From the NCBI GenBank assembly GCA_964106645.2, contig OZ067047.1: DNA of 64,000 nucleotides; one strand, given 5' to 3'. Position numbers and translations under genes: made by a program. Positions 14,615 through 30,289 of this stretch are shown one piece after another (the first letter of the stretch is position 1; each line of letters begins with the position of its first letter). The notes under the pieces are model-generated. The model was given only the letters and a program-made list of their open reading frames with translations, made no database searches and was not told the origin of the DNA. Origin of the DNA: Podarcis pityusensis. Lineage: Eukaryota.

Positions 14615-16949
14615 CAGTTCTTGTGCTGGCCTTTGTGCAAACAACAGCTAGAGAATTTCAGCAGAAAGAGACAAAGAGCGACACCTTGCCACTCATTTCC
14701 ACAGAAATAAAATAGCTGAGATAGGCACAAATTAAGCTAGCATGTCCTCCTGTTGCCTAGATTATATTTTATCAATAGAAAACACCTCATTTTAAAGTTA
14801 ATAGTGCAATCCTAACTCCCAGATATAATAGCTGAGACAGGTTAGCTGGAGCTGGAAATAGGCTGCCATCCATGACTCGGGCTGCCATCAATGACGTAGT
14901 CCAGGGTACCTACTCATACTTGTTAAGGGAAAGCCCTGCTAGCAGAAGTTAAATCACCAGAAGTTACACCAGTGTAGAGGGCAGAAAAGGATTGCATTAA
15001 GGGGGAGAAGTGGGATAACCAAAGTTATGCTGCATGCTAACTCCATTCACTGATTCACAGAGCTCTACGAAACTCAGCAGCCGAAAATGTGGGTGTAATT
15101 AAATTCAGTGCACAGGAATCAATGGAAAGGCAGAAAATGAAAGTCTACACTGCACACGCACCCCCCCCCCCAAAAAAAAACCCTTACTACACACACCCTG
15201 GCCAGAAGCAGTTAGGATGCAAAGTAATTTACCCCCTGACAAATCTGCCTGGTTAGGATGACTCTGTAAGTCTATATTAGACCACTGTAATCAATGCTGA
15301 GCACTGGAGTACCCAATGAGTCTCATGGCTCAAATAGACAAAGGCCCAATGTGTCCCGTGGCTCAAATCAGGTACATTGGCGAAAGAAATGAAATGTGAA
15401 TGAATCTAGGGATTTAAACAGGAAGTTCTTTGTGTCCATTGAATTATAAAGATATTCTTTGCTTTCTAATAAATGAAAGAGTCCAAATCCTTAAACAAAT
15501 TGAGGGAGGGAAAACTGGTACAAGTATGCATTTGTAAAATGACATTTTAATAACTTTATACAAAATGTATTTGTACATTATATAGTTCATATTAGTTATA
15601 TCAAGGACGGCTGTGCGATATAGTACTATTCCTTCACCACCAGCTTGTTAATTTTATGTATCTGATTTCTCCTGTGTCACTTTAACTGTTCTCCATCTAC
15701 AACAGACATCAGTGCCTGCAATTCACAACCATTCATACTTTGGTAGCACCCCACTGCTAGTAATGCAAAAAAAGAACTCTACCAGCACACAACATTCATT
15801 TCTTCTCCCATGGACAGTCATGGAGAAACTCTGGTTGGTTGCAAGCATAGAACTGCCAGACTAGACTCTGAAATAAGGCTGCATATAAGCCTATTTCTAA
15901 AAGATGCCCTTTTCTTTAAGGACCACATTTTGTTCTACAGCAGTACAACTCCACAGATTAGAACAAAAGTCCCCCATCTCAGAGCATCATAGCTCAATAC
16001 AACTGTAAATGACTACTGCCAAAGTAGTAGACATTCCCTTATTTTTGAGGTTTCAGACTGACATCTCTAGTAGATTACCACAAAACTCAAGGTAATTGTT
16101 TCCTCCTCTATCACTGGATGGATGAATGAATGTCCCTGAAGTGAATAGTTAAGAAGCAGTGGAGTAACTTCATCTGCAGTCTGTATGTCACATCCAGGTT
16201 AGGGTGGCTATTCTTGGGGCAAGCTTGATCATATCTAAGTTGCATTTACACTTCAGCTGAGCGGTATACTAGTTTATCTGGGTGAGTGACAAGTGTGAGT
16301 GAAAGCTGTACAACATCTTGATGAACAAATGATTTTTTATGAAGAGTTTAAAACCTGACTACCATGCAGCTATCTTTGACAGCCCCAGAGTTAAAATAAA
16401 GTCCATACAGTGCAATCCTAGGCATGTGCATTTACTCCCAGGCAAACCTGAATTGGATTGCAACCTCAGATACAAGCAAAATATCCAGAGCCACTTCATA
16501 AAACTCTACAGTTCTTCCACAAAGCAACGAGAAGCCTAATAAACTTTCTTGTGGAACAGATCCAAATGAAAAGCTATTTGCCTCGAACTGCCGATATGGG
16601 TGCGATCAAAACAAAAAAACTTCGTCTCTTTCTAGGCCCTCCTCTCACTTTTTAAAACCGAAGACCAGCAATGCATACTCGTTTCCAAGTGTCAACCGTG
16701 ACGGTCTACACGTAGGTTGACAAGCCGTTCCCTTACAAAAAGGCTTGATGGTGATGATGTTGTTGTTGATGATGATGTTGCTGCTGTTACACTTGAGGCC
16801 ACCAAAAATATGCTTCCCCCAGCTGCCCTCCCAGACCAACCACGGAGCTGCAGGATACCCTGCCCACACCCCTGCTGGGCCCTCCACGTTTGCGAAAGCC
16901 CCTTAGCTTTCCTCCCCACCCTCCCACCTACCCCGCTATGCCTAGGATC

Positions 16950-18430
16950 CTAACACCGGCCCGACGGGGGGGGGGGGTCAACGGGGCCAGCATCCTCCCA
17001 AAGCGGCGCTCTTCCCCCAGACTCCTGTGGGGGCGAGGGACAGGATACCCTCCAGTCTCACGCGCAGAGACCCGTGCGCGCGCGCACAAACGCACCCGCA
17101 CCCGAGCGAGCGCGCCCCTCAAGGCCACAAGGGGGGGGGTGTAAGGCGGCCGTCTAGGGTGGCGCCACCGCCTCCTCCTCCTCCTTCCCCGCCGCCTTCC
17201 CTGCTAACCTGCATGCCTCCTCCGTCCGCCTCCGCCTCGGTCCGCAGCCTCTTACTGAGGCCGCTGTCGGCTCCGTCGCCTCCGGGCATGGGCTGCTCCA
17301 GTTCGGGTTCCCGCTTGATCCCTCGCGGGGCTGGGACGCCGGGCACGAGCTGCTGGTGCTGGGCGCCGCCGTCCGCCATCCGAGCCGGACCCCCGGCCGC
17401 CCAAGCGGGAAGCGCAGCCGTCCTCGCCCCCTCGAAAGAGCCCGGCAGCAGCAGCTGGAGCTGGAGCGGCGCTGCTGAAGGCCCAGCCAGCCCGGTCCGG
17501 CCAGGACCAGCGGGAGACGAGGAGTAGGGGAAGGGGGCGCGCGGGACCGGCGCCTCTCCGGAGCCCGCGAGCGGGAGACCGAGGCTGTGCCCAAAGAGCG
17601 CGGCGGCGGCGCCGACTCGGGCCCGCCGGGCAGCGCCGAAAAGAACCGAGCAAAGGGAAGGCGAGAGAGAAGGCGCACCGACGCGCGAAGCGGTGCTGGC
17701 GGCAGGCGCAGCAGCAAGAGCCGTCTCCGCCGGAGACGTAGATTGGGGAGAGAGGAGAAAGGAGAGGCCGAAGCCCCTCGGTAATTTTCGGAAACGCCGT
17801 ATGGGAGCGAGGACGCGACTCGGAGCGACCCCCTCCCCTTTCCTCCTCTCTCCCCCGCTCGGCAATCTTCGGGAATGGGATGAGGTGGGCGGGGCCACGG
17901 CTCTAAGAAAGGGCGGGGCCCGGGAGAGGTCCTGGAGGGCTCGGACGTTTGAAGGCCTCTTGGCTGGGCGGGAGAAGGGAGGGCTTTGCCTGAGGGAGTC
18001 GGTTTTCCCTCAGACCCGGAGGGAAGGGAGGAAAAGGGCCCCCCAGTAATAAACGCCAGGCGACGCTCGGCTTTCGGGTCGCCCCCAGGTGCTGAAGTGC
18101 CCGAGCTCGTTTCCTCTGCTCACGGAAACAGCCGTTTGTGGATTTATTCCCAGCTGCTTGACAAGGAGCCCCGCGCTAGGAAATTGTGTTAAACGAGCTG
18201 CCTCGTTTAGAAAGGCGGCCTTCCTTCTTTCCAGGCCCGCTGCTGCTGCTGCTGCCGCCGCCGCCGCCCCTGTTGAGGTTGGCGGCGGGGCTCTGTTTGA
18301 AAGAGAGGCTCTGTGTTTATTTCATCAGGGCTGAGGCCCGAGAGACGAAATAAATTACGCGCGACCCCAATGTAACGAAACCATAAAGCGAACCCGTCAG
18401 GATAAACACAAACAAACAGCGACTGAAAGG
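16950..18430. promoter_or_regulatory. CpG island / RBFOX2 promoter
   Basis: Very GC- and CpG-rich block; GC boxes GGGCGGGG at about 17887 and 17911; (GCT)n(GCC)n tract at about 18238-18267. Confidence 0.85.
17209..17379 (-). CDS. RBFOX2: RBFOX2 first coding exon (distal promoter, 57 aa); the rest of the gene lies left of the window
   Basis: MADGGAQHQQLVPGVPAPRGIKREPELEQPMPGGDGADSGLSKRLRTEAEADGGGMQ|GTTAGC resembles the recalled human RBFOX2 N-terminus (MAEGAQPHQ...RGMKRESELELPVPGAGGDGADPGLSKRPRTEEAAADGGGGMQ). It sits in a CpG island, downstream of MYH9 as in human. Confidence 0.9.
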
Positions 18431-18518
18431 CAAAGCAAACCGTCGCCCACTAAAAAAAAAAAAAAAAAGAAAGCACTTAAAACGCCTGTGAAAATAAGTC
18501 AGCTTTAACATGGCGCTT

Positions 18519-18574: not shown

Positions 18575-21500
18575 AATTGGGTGCCATCATGGAGAAAACA
18601 CTCCTGCAGCACCATGGAGTAAGTGTCCCCTAACTGGGGTGTGGATACAGGGGTGAGGAGCCCCAGGCCCACCCCTGTCCTCTATCCAGCCCTTGGTAAG
18701 ACTCTTCAGGCCACGTTGCTCACTGACTCTTGCTTTGTGCCATCCTTGTTGGTTTTGCCTAGCTGAAATTGACCCTTTCACTAGTGTGCGCCAAAACTTA
18801 GCCCAGTGTACAAAGGTAAGATTTACTTTAATTGCTCCAGCCGCTTCTGCCTCTGGCCCTGCCAAACGCTGGGATATGCCCCTACTCCTGGTTCAGGGGT
18901 GATGGGAATTGTAGTCCAAAAACAGTTGGGAGACCCAAGTTTGGAAATTCCTGCCCTAGGGAATGTGGCCCTTAGACTGAAAAACTCCCCCCACCCTGCA
19001 GTGAAGCTGCCTCCACAGATGCTAACGCACAGGCAAGCTGATACAGGAAAAGATGCTCCTTTGAGTATTTATTTAGATATAACAGTAGGTGCTTCCACAT
19101 ATTTTCTAAAAGGAGGCAGGGTTCCACTGCTGAAGTTTGCTGGCTTGGGAGTCATTAATCCTAAACCCAGATTTGTACAGACTAAGGCTGCAGTGCTTCC
19201 TAAACACTCTTAAACAAGGAGCTCAGTGGGATTTACTTACAAGCAGACATGATTAGGGTTGCACTTTGCATATGCCCAAAGACACTCCCACTATTATTTA
19301 TTTACAACTCCCCCCGCCCTTGTTTGCATTCCAACATTGGGAGGTAAGCCCAGGGGAAGACAATTCCACATGCACATAAAGAGCAAAAAGGAAGTGTGCA
19401 CCATGTTCAAAAATGGAGATCTGCTTGTGGTGAACCATGGTTGATAGAGGCCCTTGGGGAAATATTTGCCATTAGTTTCCCATTCTGGCATTATTGTAAT
19501 AGCAGCACAGAGTGGATGATGGATGGCAAGCAGCGGGCTTCTCATTCCAGGACTGCCTGTAGCCCTTTTCCTAAACAGCTTAGCTGTGCTGCCCCTCTAG
19601 CCATGCTGTCATATGCTGTGAAAGCTGAGCCTACTTCTCTCACCTTTGTCTCTTCTTACCTTCTCTCATTGCTTCTGCCTTTGTCCCGCTTCTCCTTCGC
19701 ATCACATTCCTGGACAGAGCTGACAAACTCTGCTTGCTCTTGAGATCTCTCGGTTGCCCTCACCTTGTCCAGATCTTGTCTCTGGGTTCATGTCCCTGGG
19801 TGCTCACGAACTATGGGCACAAGTTGCATGTGACTTGGATCTTATGCAACAACAGAATAACACCTGTGCAATAATTGCAGTAAAAGCATTGTCGGGGGGG
19901 GGGGGGAGCAAGTTTGACTCATGCTGCTTTTAAGTCTATGCCATTTGTCTTATCATTAATAGGTGAAAGTATAATCCTTACAGACAGATGCAACCTTGAA
20001 GAAAAACATGCCACATTACTTTTGCTGGATCTTTTTTTTTAAAAAAGGAAACATTTTGATATCTTTAAAATGCAGAAATTCAATAACATCTGTGCCAGGT
20101 ACAGTTAGAAAAGCACAATTCACAGTCACTATTGTAAGTTCTCCATTTTCCTGTCCCAAAGGTGTAATGGCAAATATAGTAACTGTCAAACAGCCTCCTT
20201 AACCTGGTGATTCCAGATGATTAATTTGTAGTAAACAACAAAATGGTCTGTTTTCAAATGGCTTAATTTTCCTCCAGTATCTTTTTTTTGTTTTTTTTTG
20301 TTAAAGTTCAGATTTTATGCGGAGTTTGATGAGCAACCACCATCGACATTTGTCTACTTCCTGAGTGGTTAGAGTCAGTTTGCAACCCCATGAGGTGCAT
20401 GAGTAATACAACTTGCCATATACAGCTTTGCTTGAAATTACATATCTTTGGCAATCACATTTAGCTTTGGCAGAATTTTTCTGTGTTCCTCATTATGCCA
20501 TCAGGCTTTGATGCCTGTACTCCCTGAGGCAGGAAATGTGTTGGCTGTGACCTTTTTCATTCAAACTGCCCATTCCACATATTTAATTATCAGTACTAGT
20601 TTTGCTGTGAAATATTAGGCAGACCGTTTGTCTTACAATGTGAATTTTTGAAGGTGTGAGCACTCAGAAGTGGCACCCAATTTACAGAGACTTTGGCCAG
20701 AGCACTTCAAAGCAGCACTAGACTGGTTTTTCAAGAATTATTTTTTTAAATTTTTTAAAAAACTAAATACCTCTTGATTGTAGAAAAAGACTAAAAGCTG
20801 TTTATTTAAATCAAAGTTGATATTTTTTTCTGTAGGAACCCAGGGTCTTGTTTTCCTTTTTCCAATTAAACATACGGTCAAGCAACATGTGATATGAACG
20901 CTTTCTGTAAAAAAACGCTTTCTAGCCATTTTCCTTTTGAAGAAAAAAGCAGCCTTGTGGCTCTGATCCAGAATGTGCTCTCAATCTAGATTGGGGCTTG
21001 TTCCAATTTACTGCTTGAAATCACCCACACAAAATTATTTGCACCACAAGGTGATCTTTTCTGCAGATTGCATGTTCAGTTGTAAACAGCAGTCATTGAA
21101 GACACAATTTTCAACAGAATTTTAAAAATTGGGGTTTAATGGCTATTGTGTAATACATTTTGTCAGTAGTATTCTAATTGAAGTGTATTTGATGGGGAAA
21201 TTATTCTGTCTGGTCAGGTAGAAGTTGGCTTAACTGTCTCTGGGAGACCTTAACTGACAGCTAAGGATGGGTTGGAGATAGAACTCTCATTATACCAAAG
21301 AAGGATAGAAAGTATCCATATTTTGATTGGTTACCACCACAGATTTAGAATTTTCAGTTAGATTGTGTGATTGGTTGGGGCTTGACTAAAGTCAGAAGAA
21401 GTGAATATTTGATGGAACTAGTCAGTCATGGTCAGTCCATGTTGTTTGGAGAGTGTCTGTTTGTTGTTGGTAGGTGTTTTTGGTAGAAAGACAGTAAGAG

Positions 21501-24160: not shown

Positions 24161-24547
24161 TGTTGTTGTTTAGTCGTGCCCGACTCTTCATGACCCCATG
24201 GACCAGAGCACACCAGGCATTCCTGTCTTTCACTGCCTCCAGCAGTTTGGTCAAACTCATGTTGGTAGCTTTGAGAACACTGTCCCACCATCTCGTCCTC
24301 TGTCATCACCTTCTCCTTGTGCCCTCAATCTTTCCCAACATCAGGGTCTTTTCCAGGGAGTCTTCTCTTCTCATGAGGTGGCCAAAGTATTGGAGCCTCA
24401 GCTTCAGGATCTGTCCTTCCAGTGAGCACTCAGGGCTGATTTCCTTCAGAAAGGTTTGATCTTCTTGCAGTCCATGGGACTCTCAAGAGTCTCCTCTAGC
24501 ACCATAATTCAAAAGCATCAATTCTTCGGCAATCAGCCTTCTTTATG
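24161..24547 (-). mobile_element. BovB (RTE) LINE 3' fragment
   Basis: Hallmark BovB blocks (gactcttcatgaccccatggac; atgaggtggccaaagtattggag; cttgcagtccatgggactctcaagagtct; aaagcatcaattcttcgg) with a (CAA)n tail. Confidence 0.85.
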
Positions 24548-24658
24548 ATGGGAGTAGTCCAACAAAATAGGCAGGACACATTGGCTACTTCTGCATTTCT
24601 CCTATTTGTCCGCTGTTAGTATGTGATCTGTTCCCCAACTATTATCAATAAAAGGTGC

Positions 24659-25043
24659 ATGAGGAATGGTTGAGGAATTGGGTATGTTTAAGCTGGTAAA
24701 GAGAAGACTGAGAGGAGATATAATAGGCATCTTCAAAAATCTAAAAGGCTGTCACATGGAAGCTTGTTTTCTCCTGCTCTGGAGGCCAGGATCCAAACCA
24801 ATAGATTCAATGTAAAAGAAAGGTGATTCCAATTACACATCAGAAGGAATAACTTTCTGACAGTAAGAGCTCTTCAACGATAGAACAGACTCCCACACTA
24901 AGTGGTGGGTTCTCCTTCCTTGGAGGTTTTTAAGCAGAGGTTGGATGGCCATCTGTCACATATGATCTAGTCGAGTCCTGTATTGCAGAGCATTGGACTA
25001 GATGACTCTCAGGGTTCCTTCCAACTCTACAGTTCTAGGATTC
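24659..25043 (+). mobile_element. CR1 LINE 3' end
   Basis: Degenerate ELGMFKL.KRRLRGD ORF2 end and terminal ...ttccaactctacagttctaggattc. Confidence 0.8.
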
Positions 25044-25458
25044 CAAGCAGGAGCTCAACCCAACTGCCCATTCGCTGTCAGCTGCCAAATACTAAAAATA
25101 TTCAGAGGCAGGACAAACTGGAGGGTGTTATAGACAAGGAAGAGGGATAAATCTTACAATGTTATCTCAGACCCCAAACTCACAAGATGGATGTAGAACC
25201 TTTGGAGATTAAAAGGCAAGAGTAAGCTGGTCTTCCATAGACATATGAAGGCAGCCCTGTTTTGGAAAGCTTTTAATGTCTGATGTTTTGTTTTGTTCCT
25301 TTATAGTTTGTTGGAAGCTGCCCATAGTGGCTGGGGTAAAAATAAATTTTCATCATCTTGATAGGCACACCTGAGAGCCTCTAATGCCAACATCTGTGCT
25401 CTTAGGTGCAGCTCTAAGATACTGCCCAGCTTAAGGCTCCTGATTATATAATTAACAT

Positions 25459-25709
25459 AGAAGAAGAAGTGTTTGGATTTGATATCTCACTTTATCACTA
25501 CCCTGAGGAGTCTTAAAGCAGCTCACAATCTCCTTTCCCTTCCTCCCCCCATAACAAACACTCTGCGAGGTGAGTGAGGCTGAGAGACTTCAGAGAACTG
25601 TGACTAGCCCAGGATCACCCAGCAGCTGCATGTGGAGGAGCGGGGAAGCGAACCCTGTTCACCAGATTACGAGTCCACCGCTCTTAACCACTACACCACA
25701 CTGGCTCTC
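25459..25709 (-). mobile_element. tRNA-derived squamate SINE (Squam3-like)
   Basis: Minus-strand head GAGAGCCAGTGTGGTGTAGTGGTTAAGAG (A box), GGTTCGCTTCC (B box), (TTC)n tail. Confidence 0.75.
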
Positions 25710-25990
25710 AGGAGGACTGAGAACTTATAAGTTTTTACTTATAAAGTCAAATAAATCCACAAATAAATGCAGAGATGTGGATGTGCCAGGGTGCAGAGAT
25801 GTGGATCTCCTAGGGTTCCAGGTGCTGACGCAGGTTCAGTTTCCTTGGAATGAAGGACAGCGGAGACCGTGGTGTCTTCAGGAGGCATGGTTTGATTTGC
25901 ACAAGTACAACCTGAGCAGAGCATCCGCGACCCAACAGATCTTGCTTCTCCATTAAGTCCTTTTATTCTGTTGCAGTGCCAGAGGAAGGG

Positions 25991-26045
25991 GGGGCGGAGG
26001 TCAGAGATTGGGGGCGGGGACACATGATTAAGTGGTGTACAAATT
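25991..26045 (+). promoter_or_regulatory. Candidate promoter of the plus-strand unit
   Basis: GGGGCGGAGG (25991-26000) and GGGGGCGGGG (26010-26019) Sp1-type boxes, a TATA-like TACAAAT at about 26038, then a CpG-enriched ~450 bp. Confidence 0.4.
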
Positions 26046-26325
26046 AACCCAACAATGCTTTGCAGCAGCCGTATCAGCGTTTCAACGAGCCAGTTGGATA
26101 TCGGGGACTCTGACGTTGTGTACTGGAGGACCCCAAGCTGAAAGAAAATCCTTGCTCCCCAGAGAGACGTCGGCTCGGACAGCCCCGAGCTTCAACTACG
26201 AAGCCTACAAGAGCGACTCCGACTGTAGCTTCCTTGGGGCAGAGACCTGCCTGCATGGCTGATGCCACACATTCTCGCTCCTCCTCCCAGCGCAACTGAA
26301 AGAGCTTCCCCCTCTTCCTCCGCAG

Positions 26326-27628
26326 TTTCCCAAAATTGGATCGGAGAGCTTGCTGACTTCCCACGAAGCTGGAGAAAGTGATAGTTTTTGGGACTCCCCT
26401 AAGGAGGCAGGTGGTGGACAGAGCGAGACCACGTTGTCTAGACCCCGAGACCGCGTCTGGATTTACTCAGTCCTGACTGGGTAGGTGGCAGCGGCCTAAG
26501 CGGTGATTGGCAGAAGGGGAGGGGGGCATATCAACCGCAGAATGGAACTGTTGTTTCAGTTATAGGTGCCTTGAGTTTTAATGTTTGGTTGTGTTTTTTA
26601 ATTCCTCGTCTTTTGCATCTTTCCCTTGCAGGTTCCAAATCTGTCCCCATTCAGCTCCCTCAGCAGCCTTTCCTCCCTGTCCTCTGTGTCCTCCCTTGAT
26701 TCGCTTTGGGACTCACTGAATGAGGTACGTAGCAGAGCAGGAGGGAACTCCTGCTGAGCTGCACAAGGGCAACCCTGAGGCTGGAGAGGGACCCATTCAG
26801 AGTCATGGGTCACAGTTATTTGTGCTCATGCATTTCTACTCAGATACAAGCCTGTGTCCTAAGTTTTGATTTCCTGGAAAGGCTTTTGTGCAAATTGCTC
26901 GTCTTTTGCATCTTTTCCTCGCAGGTGCCAAAAATTACCCCGTCCAGCTCCATCAGCTCCCTGAGTTCCCTGTCCTCCCTGGATTCGTTTTGGGACTCAT
27001 TGAATGAGGTAGGTAGCAGACAGAAGGGAAGCCCTGCTGAGCTGCACAAGGGCAACCCTGAGGCTGGGGAAGAGGAGGAGAAGCCAGCTTTCCGGCCAGG
27101 CCACCTTCTGGACCGGTTGTGAGCAAGGGGGCAGACAGGCATGGGGCTGCTAAGGGCAGGCTGTGCTTGCTGGCGCTCTCCTCATGGACCAGCCCCCCAT
27201 GGCGCCAGGGCTGTAGGGCTTCCCTGGCTAGCGACTCAGTGTGGGCAGGAGAGTCTGGCTTCTGAGTTCCTGTCTCATTCTGGGCTGCTCTCTTTCTCCT
27301 TTCTCCCCACCACCACTGCCACCACCTCTGGGGTCCTGTCTCTGCCAGAAGTCAGCCTCTGAATCCTTTGAAAAAGTGGCTGTCTCATTTTGGGCTGCTC
27401 TCTTTCTGCTCTCTCCCCACTACCACTGTGACCACCTCTGGGCTGGTTCCTCCATCCTGTCTGGGCCAACAGTCATCCTCTGAGGACGAAATATCCCATG
27501 ACAAAGTGACAGAGGAGGAGGGAAGCCCAGGCATGGAAGCCAGAGTGGCCAAAAGAGATCCAAACAGAAGAGTGCAGTTGGGAGCAGAGGATCTGTGCAA
27601 ACCTTTCGCTTTCTTTTTTTCCACTTAG
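26326..27628 (+). CDS. Putative uncharacterised Ser-rich repeat gene or pseudogene. Exons 26326-26406, 26632-26724, 26925-27008, 27473-27628; 5' end unresolved.
   Basis: Each exon has a CAG acceptor with pyrimidine-rich sequence upstream. The first three are 81/93/84 nt, phase 0-0, with donors GAG|gcaggt, GAG|gtacgt and GAG|gtaggt. The spliced frame stays open to TAG at 27626-27628. Confidence 0.5.
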
Positions 27629-27698
27629 AAAACTGGCTGTGAAGATAAAGATCCTATGGGTAGAAAAGCAGCTAGAGACCTTGCTTTTGAGCAGAAAG

Positions 27699-27700
<2 letters not shown>

Positions 27701-27742
<42 letters not shown>
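27701..27742. repeat. (GT)n microsatellite
   Basis: Read directly. Confidence 0.95.
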
Positions 27743-27745
<3 letters not shown>

Positions 27746-29662
27746 AATGGAAGCAGTTCCCTGCTCCCCCATGTAAACTCTAGAGAGGTGGATTCATTGG
27801 CACATTTGATGTCTGACAGGAATTGCCTACAATCAGGACACATTACAAGTTGAAAACAGTTCTGTTGCTTCAGCAGCACCACCAGTGGAAGTGAAATTGA
27901 CTGCTTTCTGACAAAGGATAGCAAAACTCCAGCACTATTCCCCATCTTCAATGAAGCCTGCCACAGTGAGACTATTTTGTTTGAAGGGAATGCCTACAGT
28001 ACCTTTCATATGTCTATAGCACTTTCTGCAGATTAATCACTGAATGGCTTAAGAGTTGAAACAGTGATGAGCAAGAATATTGGAACCCCATTCATTTGTC
28101 TGTGACATATCAAGTTAGAAACCAGATACCCTCGGTCTTACTTTTTCTTGGAGGGGGAATGGGAAGAACAGTGGACTGGTCCCCAGGGTGAATTTCTGGC
28201 CTACAACTTCCATCACACCAAGCCAGCACAGCTGATGGTCAGGGATAATGGGAGCTGCATCTAAAGGGACACAGGCTGCCCATCACTGTATTGTTCTTCC
28301 CATGAGTCTCTGGTCAGGAAAACCATGCGGTTAATAGTTGAATATTAGGACTGCTGGCTTTTCAGTCCCAGCTGGGCAGGCTCCTACTCCCTCTGTTATG
28401 AGGGCTAAGAGGCAGCCACTATATGAGTTTTGGGAAGACTGCTTGAAAGCGTTGGAAGACAGCCCCACAACATGGATCAGAATTATACATCTGCTCTGAG
28501 CATGCTCAGAACTACTCTCTTGAAAGCCAGACCTCATAAGCTTTTAGCATGTTCTGTTCAGTGGAGAAGAAATGAAGTTTCCTATTTTTAGCAGCTTTTT
28601 TTGTTCTGCTTAGCATTTGTTTTGTGACCTTGCTGGGGAGCAAGCTAGCAACAGTGGACACAGTATGAGTCTTTCTATTTTTTAATTAATCACTTTGTAT
28701 TTATTTTTGTGAATTGGATTGAGGAGAAATGGGTGAGTTGTGTATGCTGCAAGGATTTCCCTCCATTTACCCACAGAACACTGCAGCTTCTGCAGGGGAA
28801 TGAGGGAAGGGGAGCATAGGTTGATTTGCGGCATGTGCAGTCCCAGCTCATTTCCAGAAAAAGTGTGAGAATTTTCATCAGCACCAGTTCTGAAGATGTT
28901 GCTAAGCTCCCTTTCCCATAATAGCTGTAGCCACACAAGTGCTTACATTTTCAGCATACCTTCTATTCCCCTGCCTTAAGATTTTTACAGGAATTTAAGC
29001 AGTAAGCAGCATATTCCCTTCAAGGTTAACTGCTTTTGCTTGAATACTGCCTCCGATTCATCCTCAGCTAGGCTCATATAATCATACTAACCACATTAAA
29101 GTAGGTATCAAAGCTCTGATTCTTCACTGGTCTTCCTGCCACTTAACGACTCAATGTAGGCTACTCAGAAAAGCTGCCCAGTTAAAAGTAGATTATTATA
29201 TTGTAGGCCCCTTTTTAGAGTATCAGTTGAACAAGCCATCCAATACTAGTAGTATATCGTCTATAAAATGATCCAATTGGTACTTTAAAATGAAACTTCA
29301 CCCAACACCTAGTGTTGGATGAAGGGTACTGAAGCTATTGAATGCAACTGACAACGAACAGAATCAGTTTTACCGAACTATCAGGCTGCAAGTTGATCTA
29401 TGAAGCTACATCACTGGAATTTCAATTTCCCCTTTAGCCATCTGCTGGGGAAGTTTGAAGAACAGCACATTTTTACTGAAAGCTTGACATTCATCTCTTA
29501 CAGCAGAGCTACATATTCAGATTAATTACATGATACTTACTGTCTTACTGGAATTGTACCACTGTAAAATGCAGATAGGTTGCTGTATAATTAAATGCTT
29601 TCATATAAACTCCCTACACAAAGAAAACAGGCACAATGGACTGACAAGCTAGCCTTCTACAG

Positions 29663-29959
29663 CAGGGGTTGGCAAGGCTTTCCGGGCATGGGCCGGATCA
29701 CTCTGTGGAGATCCTCCGTGGGCCGGGCCGGTGCAGCGTGACACCAGAAATCGCTTCTGCGCATGCCCAGATGCCCAAAATCGCACCTGCGCAGAAGTGA
29801 TTTCCGGGGCTGTGGAAGAGAGTCCCCGCATCTTGCTGGTTTAGTGCAGCATGCGGGGACTCGCCGATCAGGCGGCTCGGTTCGGGGGCAGCTCATGGGC
29901 CAGTTAAACGGCCTTTGTGGGCTACTTCTGGTCCATGGGCCTTAGGTTGCCGACCCCTG
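29663..29959. mobile_element. hAT-type MITE, CpG-rich (young)
   Basis: TIRs CAGGGGTTGGCAA/TTGCCGACCCCTG; perfect 8-bp TSD TTCTACAG. Confidence 0.88.
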
Positions 29960-30289
29960 TTCTACAGGAAGGGTATAAAAATTGCTGAGTCATGCAGGAG
30001 ATTTGGGATTTTTGTACCTTCATGAAAAGAAAAGTCTGAAGATGGCTAGTATAACCCTGCAGTTATTTCATCAAGTTCACTCATTCCCTGCTCTCCAACA
30101 TAGCTCCATACCCAATAGACAGATCTCTGCTGATGACAGATGGTTTCCAAATAGTAATTTGGCACTGCAAAAAGTTTCTTATTAACAATATATATCCCCT
30201 ACTTCTTGTGCTAGGTTCTCTAGTGCTAGGCATTCAACAGGGCAGCTCCACAACATTCAGGCACATGGTACATAAGCATACACAGAAGA

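What the first reader, a model, noticed from the sequence alone, without database searches (positions are those of the whole stretch)
25991..27628. Hidden plus-strand gene built from tandemly duplicated Ser-rich exons, between MYH9 and RBFOX2
Seen: three paralogous short exons, each with a polypyrimidine+CAG acceptor, a length divisible by 3, and a GAG|donor. They are 26326-26406 FPKIGSESLLTSHEAGESDSFWDSPKE, 26632-26724 VPNLSPFSSLSSLSSLSSVSSLDSLWDSLNE and 26925-27008 VPKITPSSSISSLSSLSSLDSFWDSLNE. A fourth acceptor (ccaacag|27473) continues in frame as SSSEDEISHDKVTEEEGSPGMEARVAKRDPNRRVQLGAEDLCKPFAFFFST*. Copies 2 and 3 also share flanking intron sequence, differ by a frame-preserving 9-nt indel, and show several synonymous differences (AGC/AGT, GAT TCG kept, CTG/TTG). 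The ORF track misses the joined product because it is split by introns. Inference: a lineage-specific gene (or recent pseudogene) that grew by exon duplication, convergent with MYH9 and divergent from RBFOX2. I do not recognise the protein.
Basis: partly seen in the sequence, partly recalled or inferred. Interest (0 to 1): 0.82.

Follow-up and report, generated by a model that had tools for sequence, protein, structure and literature searches.

The report
Transcribed relic of lizard orphan gene
Between the myosin gene MYH9 and RBFOX2 this wall lizard carries a transcribed, spliced but rearranged partial copy of a small gene family found only in lacertid lizards; in the one transcript form I could check it has no usable start codon, so it is more likely a pseudogene or non-coding RNA than a new protein gene.

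Summary
The exon-like units are real and are not chance. RNA contigs of close relatives show the GT..AG junction 26724|26925 on the + strand.

The four-exon model fails in two places:
Its Ser frame is out of phase with exon 2.
- The only exon 3 junction seen goes to 27429, not 27473.

Profile and word searches found relatives only in Lacertidae. These are RefSeq "uncharacterized" proteins of Podarcis muralis, P. raffonei and Zootoca vivipara. They are built from tandem exon modules: A (ending LLSPDW), B (SLDSLWDSLNE), then an acidic exon. The P. muralis copies lie beside NDUFA7, not here.

The window is 98.3% identical to P. lilfordi. It holds a DNA-level partial copy with homologous introns, in the order promoter piece, D-type relic, A tail, two B exons, one A/C-type exon head. 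In the first-exon isoform no ATG opens the Ser frame, and no RefSeq protein from this locus was found.

Verdict: a transcribed relic or lncRNA of a lineage-specific family (about 0.6). It may still code through an unseen 5' exon (about 0.25). I searched exon by exon and never joined the exons.

The parts
25953..26013 (+). GC-box promoter-like piece, homologous to the upstream region of the paralogues
   Evidence: 79-84% identical to L002 9451-9496 and to L003/L004 9076-9138. RNA contigs begin just downstream, at 26013-26067.
26013..26480 (+). First exon seen in RNA contigs (5' end approximate); the donor is ACTGG|GTAGGT at 26480|26481
   Evidence: Contigs 26013-26158, 26129-26479, 26221-26480 and 26347-26479 continue into exon 2. 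The joint 26480->26633 is explicit in run X13. All three frames carry stops. The only ATG-started ORFs are 7, 14 and 28 codons long.
26326..26406 (+).
   Evidence: Window 26280-26423 is 70% identical to L002 12585-12736, the D exon of P0003. tblastn of P0003/P0004 gives E about 1e-3. The donor position reads GC. RNA contigs run through both of its ends.
26440..26480 (+). Tail of an A-type exon (…RLDLLSPDW), in phase 0 with exon 2
   Evidence: Window 26440-26789 is 83-84% identical to the A tail, intron and B exon of L002. A 10-residue match to P0004 is exact. A stop lies 13 codons upstream, and no ATG follows it.
26632..26724 (+). B-type exon, copy 1 (31 codons, ends SLDSLWDSLNE)
   Evidence: Present without mismatch in RNA contigs, with a GT..AG joint to 26925. 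Homologous to the B exons of the paralogues.
26925..27008 (+). B-type exon, copy 2 (28 codons, ends SLDSFWDSLNE)
   Evidence: Joint 26724|26925 seen in runs X2 and X3. One contig ends exactly at 27008. Compared with copy 1 there are 6 synonymous and 7 conservative codon differences.
26557..27085 (+). Local tandem duplication, about 285 nt per unit, that doubled the B exon together with its flanking intron
27265..27442 (+). 110-nt tandem duplication inside the B-to-A intron. It copies the acceptor region, leaving a remnant acceptor at 27349|27350.
   Evidence: Family D2, 88% identical. Alignment to the paralogues.
27473..27628 (+). The first 54 nt are a conserved A/C-type exon head behind the conserved acceptor. 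The rest shows at most patchy residual similarity to the paralogues and ends at TAG 27626-27628.
   Evidence: Window 27380-27527 is 88% identical to L002 12367-12520. The 54-nt head matches 53/54. No database protein of 47-150 aa carries this peptide.
27429..27633 (+). Stretch joined directly to exon 3 in the one RNA contig that crosses this junction. In the Ser frame it starts with TGA.
   Evidence: Run X3 record 31, joint 27007/8->27428/9, with non-canonical ends in the window.

Best explanation
The locus is a transcribed, spliced and rearranged partial duplicate of a lacertid-specific orphan gene family.

The family's genes are built from tandem two-exon modules:
- A: acidic, ending LLSPDW.
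- B: Ser-Ser-Leu repeats ending SLDS[LF]WDSLNE.
- After the modules, an acidic C exon.
- Last, a D-type or an alternative terminal exon.

A DNA segment carrying introns was copied into the MYH9-RBFOX2 intergenic region. It now reads: promoter piece, D-type relic, A tail, B, B (a local 285-nt duplication), then one A/C-type exon head.

Shown: the inherited promoter-like piece is present and the inherited splice sites still work, so a low-level spliced + strand RNA is made.

Inferred: in Podarcis this RNA no longer encodes the family's protein. In the first-exon isoform the Ser frame has no ATG, and the D relic is out of phase. The locus is therefore a transcribed pseudogene or lncRNA. Its B exons still look coding because they were under protein-level constraint for much of their history.
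For: - Spliced + strand RNA: a GT..AG joint at 26724|26925 in two runs of two studies, and 26480->26632 in two species.
- Homology covers introns as well as exons, at 70-88% over 26280-27527. A promoter piece at 25953-26013 is also homologous.
- Family members are found only in Podarcis and Zootoca. The profile search of 1.84e9 representatives gave 3 hits, and the word search gave 8.
- The P. muralis copies lie beside NDUFA7 and 7tm_3 fragments on two other chromosomes.
- There is no ATG in the Ser frame, and stops occur in all frames of exon 1. The D relic is offset by 155 nt from the donor.
- The same layout is present in P. lilfordi, so this is not an assembly error.
- No RefSeq protein of P. 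muralis or P. raffonei carries the exon 2, 3 or 4 peptides. Only an ab initio P. lilfordi model that mixes frames does.
- Exons are no better conserved than introns between units.
- The contig isoform puts TGA directly after exon 3.
Against: - The most abundant contig (run X3 record 31, depth 35) has 654 nt of unplaced 5' sequence. That sequence could supply an in-frame ATG.
- Differences between exons 2 and 3 are 6 synonymous and 7 conservative in the Ser frame. The joint permutation p is about 1e-4 under a uniform-substitution null. Under a null that keeps the observed substitution types, no permutation of 5000 met both criteria, and each criterion alone gave p of 0.002-0.005; that run used a protein-guided alignment, which is biased towards the result. 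The other two frames have stops.
- The Ser-Ser-Leu repeats use mixed Ser codons across copies.
- The 54-nt exon 4 head matches the paralogues 53/54.
- Zootoca LOC118075333 shares VPKITP and …LLSPYW with this locus and is modelled as a 251-aa protein. An orthologue may therefore be coding.
- Only contigs were available, not raw reads, and they come from related species rather than the window's own.
Confidence: 0.6

Rival explanations
1. The locus is still a working protein-coding member of the family. An alternative 5' exon, not identified here, would supply an ATG in phase with exon 2. The product would be a small acidic, disordered protein carrying two SLDS[LF]WDSLNE motifs. It would end either right after exon 3 or in the A/C-type exon.
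For: - The unplaced 654-nt 5' part of the main contig in run X3.
- A codon-level pattern of constraint in the Ser frame only.
- Splice sites intact in both the window and P. lilfordi.
- The near-identical exon 4 head.
- A predicted 251-aa Zootoca protein that shares this locus's signatures.
Against: - No RefSeq protein of P. muralis or P. raffonei with these peptides was found, although their paralogues were.
- No homologue of the paralogues' N-terminal coding exons occurs in the window.
- Exons are not more conserved than introns.
- Three substitutions separate the window from P. lilfordi in the exon 4 frame. By position arithmetic two are at first codon positions.
- The constraint signal could date from before the ORF was lost.
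Confidence: 0.25
2. The whole family, the RefSeq models included, is non-coding. The Ser-rich frames would be open only because the exons are short and pyrimidine-rich, and the 9-nt indels would be microsatellite slippage.
For: - Pyrimidine-rich exons rarely contain stops.
- The indel falls in a period-9 repeat.
- pN/pS of the A exons among paralogues is 0.3-1.6.
- In L002 the introns are more alike than the exons.
- There is no Pfam match and the predicted structure has low confidence.
Against: - ORFs run through 4-6 exons in seven gene models from three species in two genera. The B motif is invariant.
- Four of five B exons have lengths divisible by 3.
- Ser codons switch between the AGY and TCN classes while the residue stays Ser.
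Confidence: 0.1
3. The unit is part of a high-copy transposon or an LTR-borne ORF, and the exon-like features are chance.
For: - Earlier notes on this genome mention LTR ORFs with acidic/Ser-rich and then Arg-rich layouts.
- The DNA just upstream (24165-25875) is high-copy repeat.
Against: - Contig depth over 26000-27650 is single to double digits, against 1e4-1e5 over the neighbouring repeats.
- There are only two copies of the unit in the window.
- The splice sites are used.
- The paralogues are intron-containing genes in segmental duplications with NDUFA7.
- A sequence look-up in the scan's notes found nothing.
Confidence: 0.03

Closest known systems
RefSeq 'uncharacterized protein' models: LOC144326097, LOC144329085, LOC144326050, LOC114588357 and LOC144329118 (Podarcis muralis), and LOC128405524 (P. 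raffonei)
   Same: They share the B-type exon (SLDSLWDSLNE), the A-type tail (LLSPDW) spliced to B in phase 0, and the D-type exon (…DTFWDS…). They also share homologous introns, acceptors and a promoter piece.
   Different: - Those genes lie beside NDUFA7 and 7tm_3 fragments on other chromosomes.
- They have an ATG, full A exons, and a C exon followed by a terminal exon (D-type in two models, an alternative exon in the others).
- The window copy has the D relic first and only the A tail. It has a doubled B exon, no C exon and no in-phase ATG.
Zootoca vivipara LOC118075333 (XP_034953136.1)
   Same: It shares VPKITP at the start of the B exon and …LLSPYW before it. Its N-terminal part shows weak co-linear similarity to frame 0 of the window's first exon. 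It is possibly the orthologue.
   Different: - It is modelled with an open 133-codon N-terminus. The window has five stops in that frame.
- Its genomic place could not be fetched.
- The exon 4 peptide shows no significant BLASTP match to it.
P. lilfordi CAI5786096.1, a hypothetical predicted protein at this very locus
   Same: It covers the same DNA. L001 is 98.3% identical to the window over 28 kb.
   Different: It is an ab initio patchwork. It uses a 28-nt first exon at window 20071-20098, reads exon 2 in the wrong frame and translates retained intron. It is not evidence for a protein.
Transcribed partial gene duplicates (duplicated pseudogenes expressed as lncRNA)
   Same: The copy is made at the DNA level and keeps its introns. 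The inherited promoter piece and splice sites are still used, while the ORF is lost.
   Different: The parent family is itself an uncharacterised, fast-evolving orphan, so the direction of copying and the loss of function are inferred, not shown.

Membership tests
Lacertid A-B module orphan family (the RefSeq LOC models listed under Closest known systems; no Pfam entry) | B-type exon encoding …SS.SSLSSLDS[LF]WDSLNE, with phase-0 ends | tested here: met
   A profile of the window's units retrieves P0002 (E 3e-6) and P0003 (E 1e-5) among 1.84e9 proteins.
Lacertid A-B module orphan family (the RefSeq LOC models listed under Closest known systems; no Pfam entry) | A-type exon ending LLSPDW, spliced to B | tested here: inconclusive
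   Only the last 41 nt of an A exon are present (26440-26480). Its donor is used and is in phase with B. The head of the A exon is missing at that position. A separate A/C-type head lies at 27473-27527.
Lacertid A-B module orphan family (the RefSeq LOC models listed under Closest known systems; no Pfam entry) | Acidic C exon followed by a D-type or alternative terminal exon | tested here: not met
   Only an acceptor remnant with about 14 nt of the C-type start survives, at 27350-27363. The D-type relic lies upstream of the B exons, not downstream.
Lacertid A-B module orphan family (the RefSeq LOC models listed under Closest known systems; no Pfam entry) | Continuous ORF from an ATG through the modules | tested here: not met
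   This was tested for the RNA-supported first-exon isoform only. Phase arithmetic on single-exon translations gives no in-phase ATG, and stops occur in all frames. The isoform with the unknown 5' part was not testable.
Transcribed pseudogene / lncRNA | Transcribed and spliced on the + strand | tested here: met
   GT..AG joints in contigs of two related species and three studies.
Transcribed pseudogene / lncRNA | No translated ORF | not testable with these tools
   No ribosome profiling or proteomics was available. There is only the absence of an ATG-started ORF in one isoform and the absence of RefSeq proteins.
Transposable element | High copy number and terminal repeats | tested here: not met
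   Depth is low compared with the adjacent repeats. The unit occurs twice in the window, and no flanking inverted or long direct repeats were found.
LIR-type or tryptophan-acidic short linear motif proteins | Binding of the W-x-x-L / acidic-W motif to ATG8 proteins or to kinesin light chain | not tested
   The resemblance of S-L-D-S-L-W-D-S-L to these motifs comes from memory only. AF2 gives a low-confidence short helix there.

The most novel reading that the evidence does not exclude
The MYH9-RBFOX2 copy, with Zootoca LOC118075333 as its orthologue, would be a working member of a lacertid-only family. The family's proteins would be acidic and disordered, assembled by amplification of exon modules. 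They would display repeated SLDS[LF]WDSLNE motifs as multivalent docking sites, and their exons would evolve faster than their introns.
Probability: 0.2. Interest if true: 0.55.

Novelty: new member of a known kind. Interest (0 to 1): 0.33.

Why it matters
For the scan, a claimed hidden gene turns out to be a copy of an automatically annotated family, and the proposed exon model has been corrected.

For biology, the interest lies more in the family than in this copy. It is an orphan gene family restricted to lacertid lizards, with no Pfam domain and no literature. It is built from tandem exon modules, has mixed-codon Ser-Ser-Leu repeats, and in one array its exons diverge faster than its introns. 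Such a family is a usable case for studying how young genes grow, spread by segmental duplication and decay. This locus would show the decay stage, in which the promoter piece and splice sites outlive the reading frame.

Tried and rejected
- Pfam on every exon peptide and on all family proteins: nothing above threshold.
- ESM Atlas on P0005: best score 0.77, no lead.
- Rfam on 18-32 kb: no hosted small RNA.
- Papers mentioning the LOC identifiers: none.
- Word search with the exon 4 ORF: no candidate.
- BLASTP of the exon 4 peptide against Zootoca P0002: no alignment. My eyeballed similarity is therefore withdrawn.
- Fetching the Zootoca locus: not on record.
- I first thought that the paralogue's start codon aligned with the F-W-D-S codons of unit 1, and that a frameshift linked the D relic to the A tail. 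One search showed that the ATG is not in the A exon, and one search placed it in a small upstream exon whose window counterpart reads GTG at 27241. Both ideas were dropped.
- The LTR-ORF lead from earlier notes: no link found.
- AF2 of P0005 with the family alignment: mean pLDDT 54, so no fold search was run.
- The P. lilfordi comparison is too close to test constraint: about 2% divergence over the locus, and 4 differences in the three exons.
- pN/pS of the A exons is inconclusive.
- Exons were never joined for any search or script. Phases were worked out from single-exon translations.
Later scripts read them from files.

Full report
**Context**

The window is from a Podarcis wall lizard. Positions 10000-37901 align to P. 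lilfordi chromosome record OX395135.1 (locus L001) at 98.3% identity over 28 kb.

On the minus strand lie myosin tail and head exons, from about 31.6 kb to the window's end. In L001 these belong to a 1960-residue product. Also on the minus strand is an RBFOX first exon in a CpG island at 17.1-17.9 kb. The L001 neighbour there carries RRM_1 and Fox-1_C.

**The observation**

- The translations and splice-site contexts are as stated.
- Units 2 and 3 are a local tandem duplication of about 285 nt that includes flanking intron.
- The core of the unit occurs exactly twice in the window; shuffles give none.

Three qualifications apply.
- The first unit's "donor" is GC, not GT.
- The 9-nt indel falls in a period-9 repeat, so slippage alone could preserve the frame.
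- Exon identity between units (81%) is no higher than that of the flanking intron (73% and 83%).

**RNA evidence**

One look-up of public runs and one laying of contigs were allowed. The four runs laid are Logan contigs of two close relatives. Organism A's DNA runs hold about 40% of the 31-mers, which I estimate to mean roughly 3% divergence. The runs are only guessed to be RNA. Contigs that skip 26725-26924 with GT..AG ends show spliced RNA from the + strand.

What the contigs support:
- The junction 26724|26925, in runs X2 and X3 from two studies.
- An exon end at 27008; one contig stops exactly there.
- A first exon running uninterrupted from about 26013-26067 to 26480. Its donor ACTGG|GTAGGT is joined to 26632. 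The joint is explicit in run X13. In runs X1 and X2 it follows from contig lengths.

What they do not support:
Contigs run through both.
- The junction 27008|27473. The one contig that crosses this point (run X3 record 31; 1037 nt, depth 35) joins 27007/8 to 27428/9. The window and P. lilfordi have no AG there, and the Ser frame would meet TGA at once.

Depth arithmetic shows that record 31 does not cover 26073-26480. Its 654-nt 5' part therefore lies somewhere I could not identify. Unspliced contigs also occur. Depths are low, from 3 to 35.

**Reading frames**

Phases come from single-exon translations.
- The frame in phase with exon 2 has a stop 13 codons before the 26480 donor, and no ATG follows it.
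- The frame of unit 1 leaves two bases at the donor. It therefore reads exon 2 in a frame that stops inside exon 2. It also has no ATG after its upstream stop.
- The only ATG-started ORFs in the first exon are 7, 14 and 28 codons long. The longest is frameshifted in P. lilfordi by a 1-nt indel.

In this isoform the Ser-rich peptide therefore has no AUG start.

**Relatives**

Pfam finds nothing.

A word search with the ORF around exon 3 found one protein, CAI5786096.1 of P. lilfordi, encoded at this very locus. Its sequence is an ab initio patchwork. It uses a 28-nt first exon at window 20071-20098, reads exon 2 in the wrong frame, translates retained intron and adds downstream pieces.

It gave three hits among 1.84 billion representatives. 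They were that model, XP_034953136.1 of Zootoca vivipara and XP_077778157.1 of Podarcis muralis. A second word search with these two added four more P. muralis models and one P. raffonei model, all named "uncharacterized protein".

None has a Pfam domain. The ESM Atlas gives no lead. No paper mentions them.

**Architecture of the family**

Mapping the proteins on their loci shows a modular build.
- Exon A has 33 acidic codons and ends in LLSPDW.
- Exon B starts VPSMSP, continues with Ser-Ser-Leu repeats and ends SLDSLWDSLNE.
- A and B alternate in tandem, with a period of about 665 nt in L002.
- After the modules comes an acidic exon C.
- The terminal exon is either D-type, carrying a second …DTFWDS… motif, or an alternative Pro- and Arg-rich exon.

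The fetched P. muralis copies lie beside NDUFA7 copies and 7tm_3 receptor fragments on two chromosomes. None lies near MYH9.

The proteins are acidic (pI 4.0-5.2) and rich in Ser. AlphaFold gives mean pLDDT 54, with short helices over the W motif, so they are mostly disordered.

**What the window holds**

blastn of the window against the paralogous loci shows homology that includes introns. This is therefore a DNA-level copy, not a retrocopy.

| Window | Homologous to | Identity |
|---|---|---|
| 25953-26013 | upstream GC-box region of the paralogues | 79-84% |
| 26280-26423 | D exon with its acceptor | 70% |
| 26440-26789 | A tail, intron, B exon, intron | 83-84% |
| 26893-27363 | B exon and the B-to-A intron | about 80% |
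| 27380-27527 | acceptor and head of an A/C-type exon | 88% |

- Exon 1 is a D-type relic.
- Exons 2 and 3 are B-type exons, doubled locally.
- Exon 4 begins as a family exon head behind the family's conserved acceptor at 27472|27473.

Clear homology ends at 27527. Beyond it the window has a 14-nt insertion, then about 20 nt of similar sequence. After that the open frame continues through DNA with only patchy similarity to the TAG at 27626.

Compared with the paralogues the order is scrambled, with D first. Most of one A exon and all of C are missing.

**Coding or not**

Signs of past or present protein-level constraint:
- Differences between exons 2 and 3 are 6 synonymous and 7 conservative in the Ser frame. 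The other two frames carry stops. The joint permutation p is about 1e-4 under a uniform-substitution null. A refined null gave no permutation of 5000 meeting both criteria, but its alignment was protein-guided and so is biased.
- The Ser-Ser-Leu repeats are written with mixed AGY and TCN Ser codons in different copies.
- Four of five B exons have lengths divisible by 3.
- The 54-nt head of exon 4 matches an unannotated element of the paralogues 53/54. This could reflect selection or a gene-conversion patch.

Signs against a working gene at this locus:
- There is no in-phase ATG in the first-exon isoform.
- The architecture is rearranged.
- Exons are no better conserved than introns.
- No RefSeq protein of P. 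muralis or P. raffonei carries these peptides, although their paralogues were found.

For the family as a whole, pN/pS of the A exons is 0.3-1.6. In one array the introns are 99-100% identical while the A exons are 90-95% identical. This fits fast evolution but does not prove selection.

The Zootoca model shares VPKITP and …LLSPYW with this locus. It also shows weak co-linear similarity to the window's first exon. It may be the orthologue and may be coding. Its DNA could not be fetched, and exon 4 shows no significant match to it.

**Verdict**

The most likely reading (about 0.6) is a transcribed, spliced relic or lncRNA derived from a lacertid-specific orphan family. The main rival (about 0.25) is a still-coding small protein that uses the unidentified 5' exon. 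A transposon origin is close to excluded.

The function of the family's proteins is unknown. The W motif resembles LIR or tryptophan-acidic docking motifs, but that resemblance is from memory and was not tested.

Noticed in passing
L002:10000-11990 (P. muralis OZ076973.1): Three tandem A-B exon modules, period about 665 nt. The A-to-B introns are 99-100% identical, while the A exons are 90-95% and the B exons 87-98% identical. The third B exon is frameshifted by a 7-nt length difference. Exons diverging faster than introns suggests diversifying selection or intron-biased gene conversion.
   Followed up: partly
window 27473-27526; L002:12468-12521; the equivalent in L003: A 54-nt exon head (SSSEDEISHDKVTEEEGS) matches 53/54 between this locus and an unannotated element lying between exons C and D of the paralogues. 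The B exons of the same loci differ by about a quarter of their bases.
   Followed up: partly
window 24165-25875: Repeat-rich block with contig depths of 1e4-1e5 in the transcriptome-like runs. Window 24165-24547 has four copies at about 92-93% identity in L002 (three full-length, one partial) and one in L003, so it is probably a SINE-like element.
   Followed up: no
window 27007/8 -> 27428/9: Non-canonical joint in one 1037-nt contig of a related species. The ends are GT..TG or GG..CT in the window and in P. lilfordi. The contig's 654-nt 5' part could not be placed.
   Followed up: partly
window 17119-17898 (-), CpG island 16000-18500: First exon of the long RBFOX isoform, in a GC-rich island (58.6% GC). 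An alanine-codon run lies on the + strand near 18250.
   Followed up: no
window 20071-20098: The P. lilfordi annotation starts its model of this locus with a 28-nt ATG mini-exon in AT-rich DNA 6 kb upstream. This looks like an ab initio artefact.
   Followed up: yes
L003/L004 (P. muralis OZ076963.1, 2.19-2.23 Mb) and L002: The block made of a 7tm_3 receptor fragment, a family gene and NDUFA7 is present on two chromosomes. On one of them the receptor-fragment-plus-gene part is tandemly doubled, which indicates segmental duplication that includes an NDUFA7 copy.
   Followed up: no
window 27701-27742 and 29485-30200: A (GT)21 microsatellite lies just downstream of the last exon piece. Contig depth rises sharply from about 29485, which probably marks the end of the myosin gene's 3' UTR. 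The + strand has no AATAAA or ATTAAA between 27400 and 29095.
   Followed up: partly
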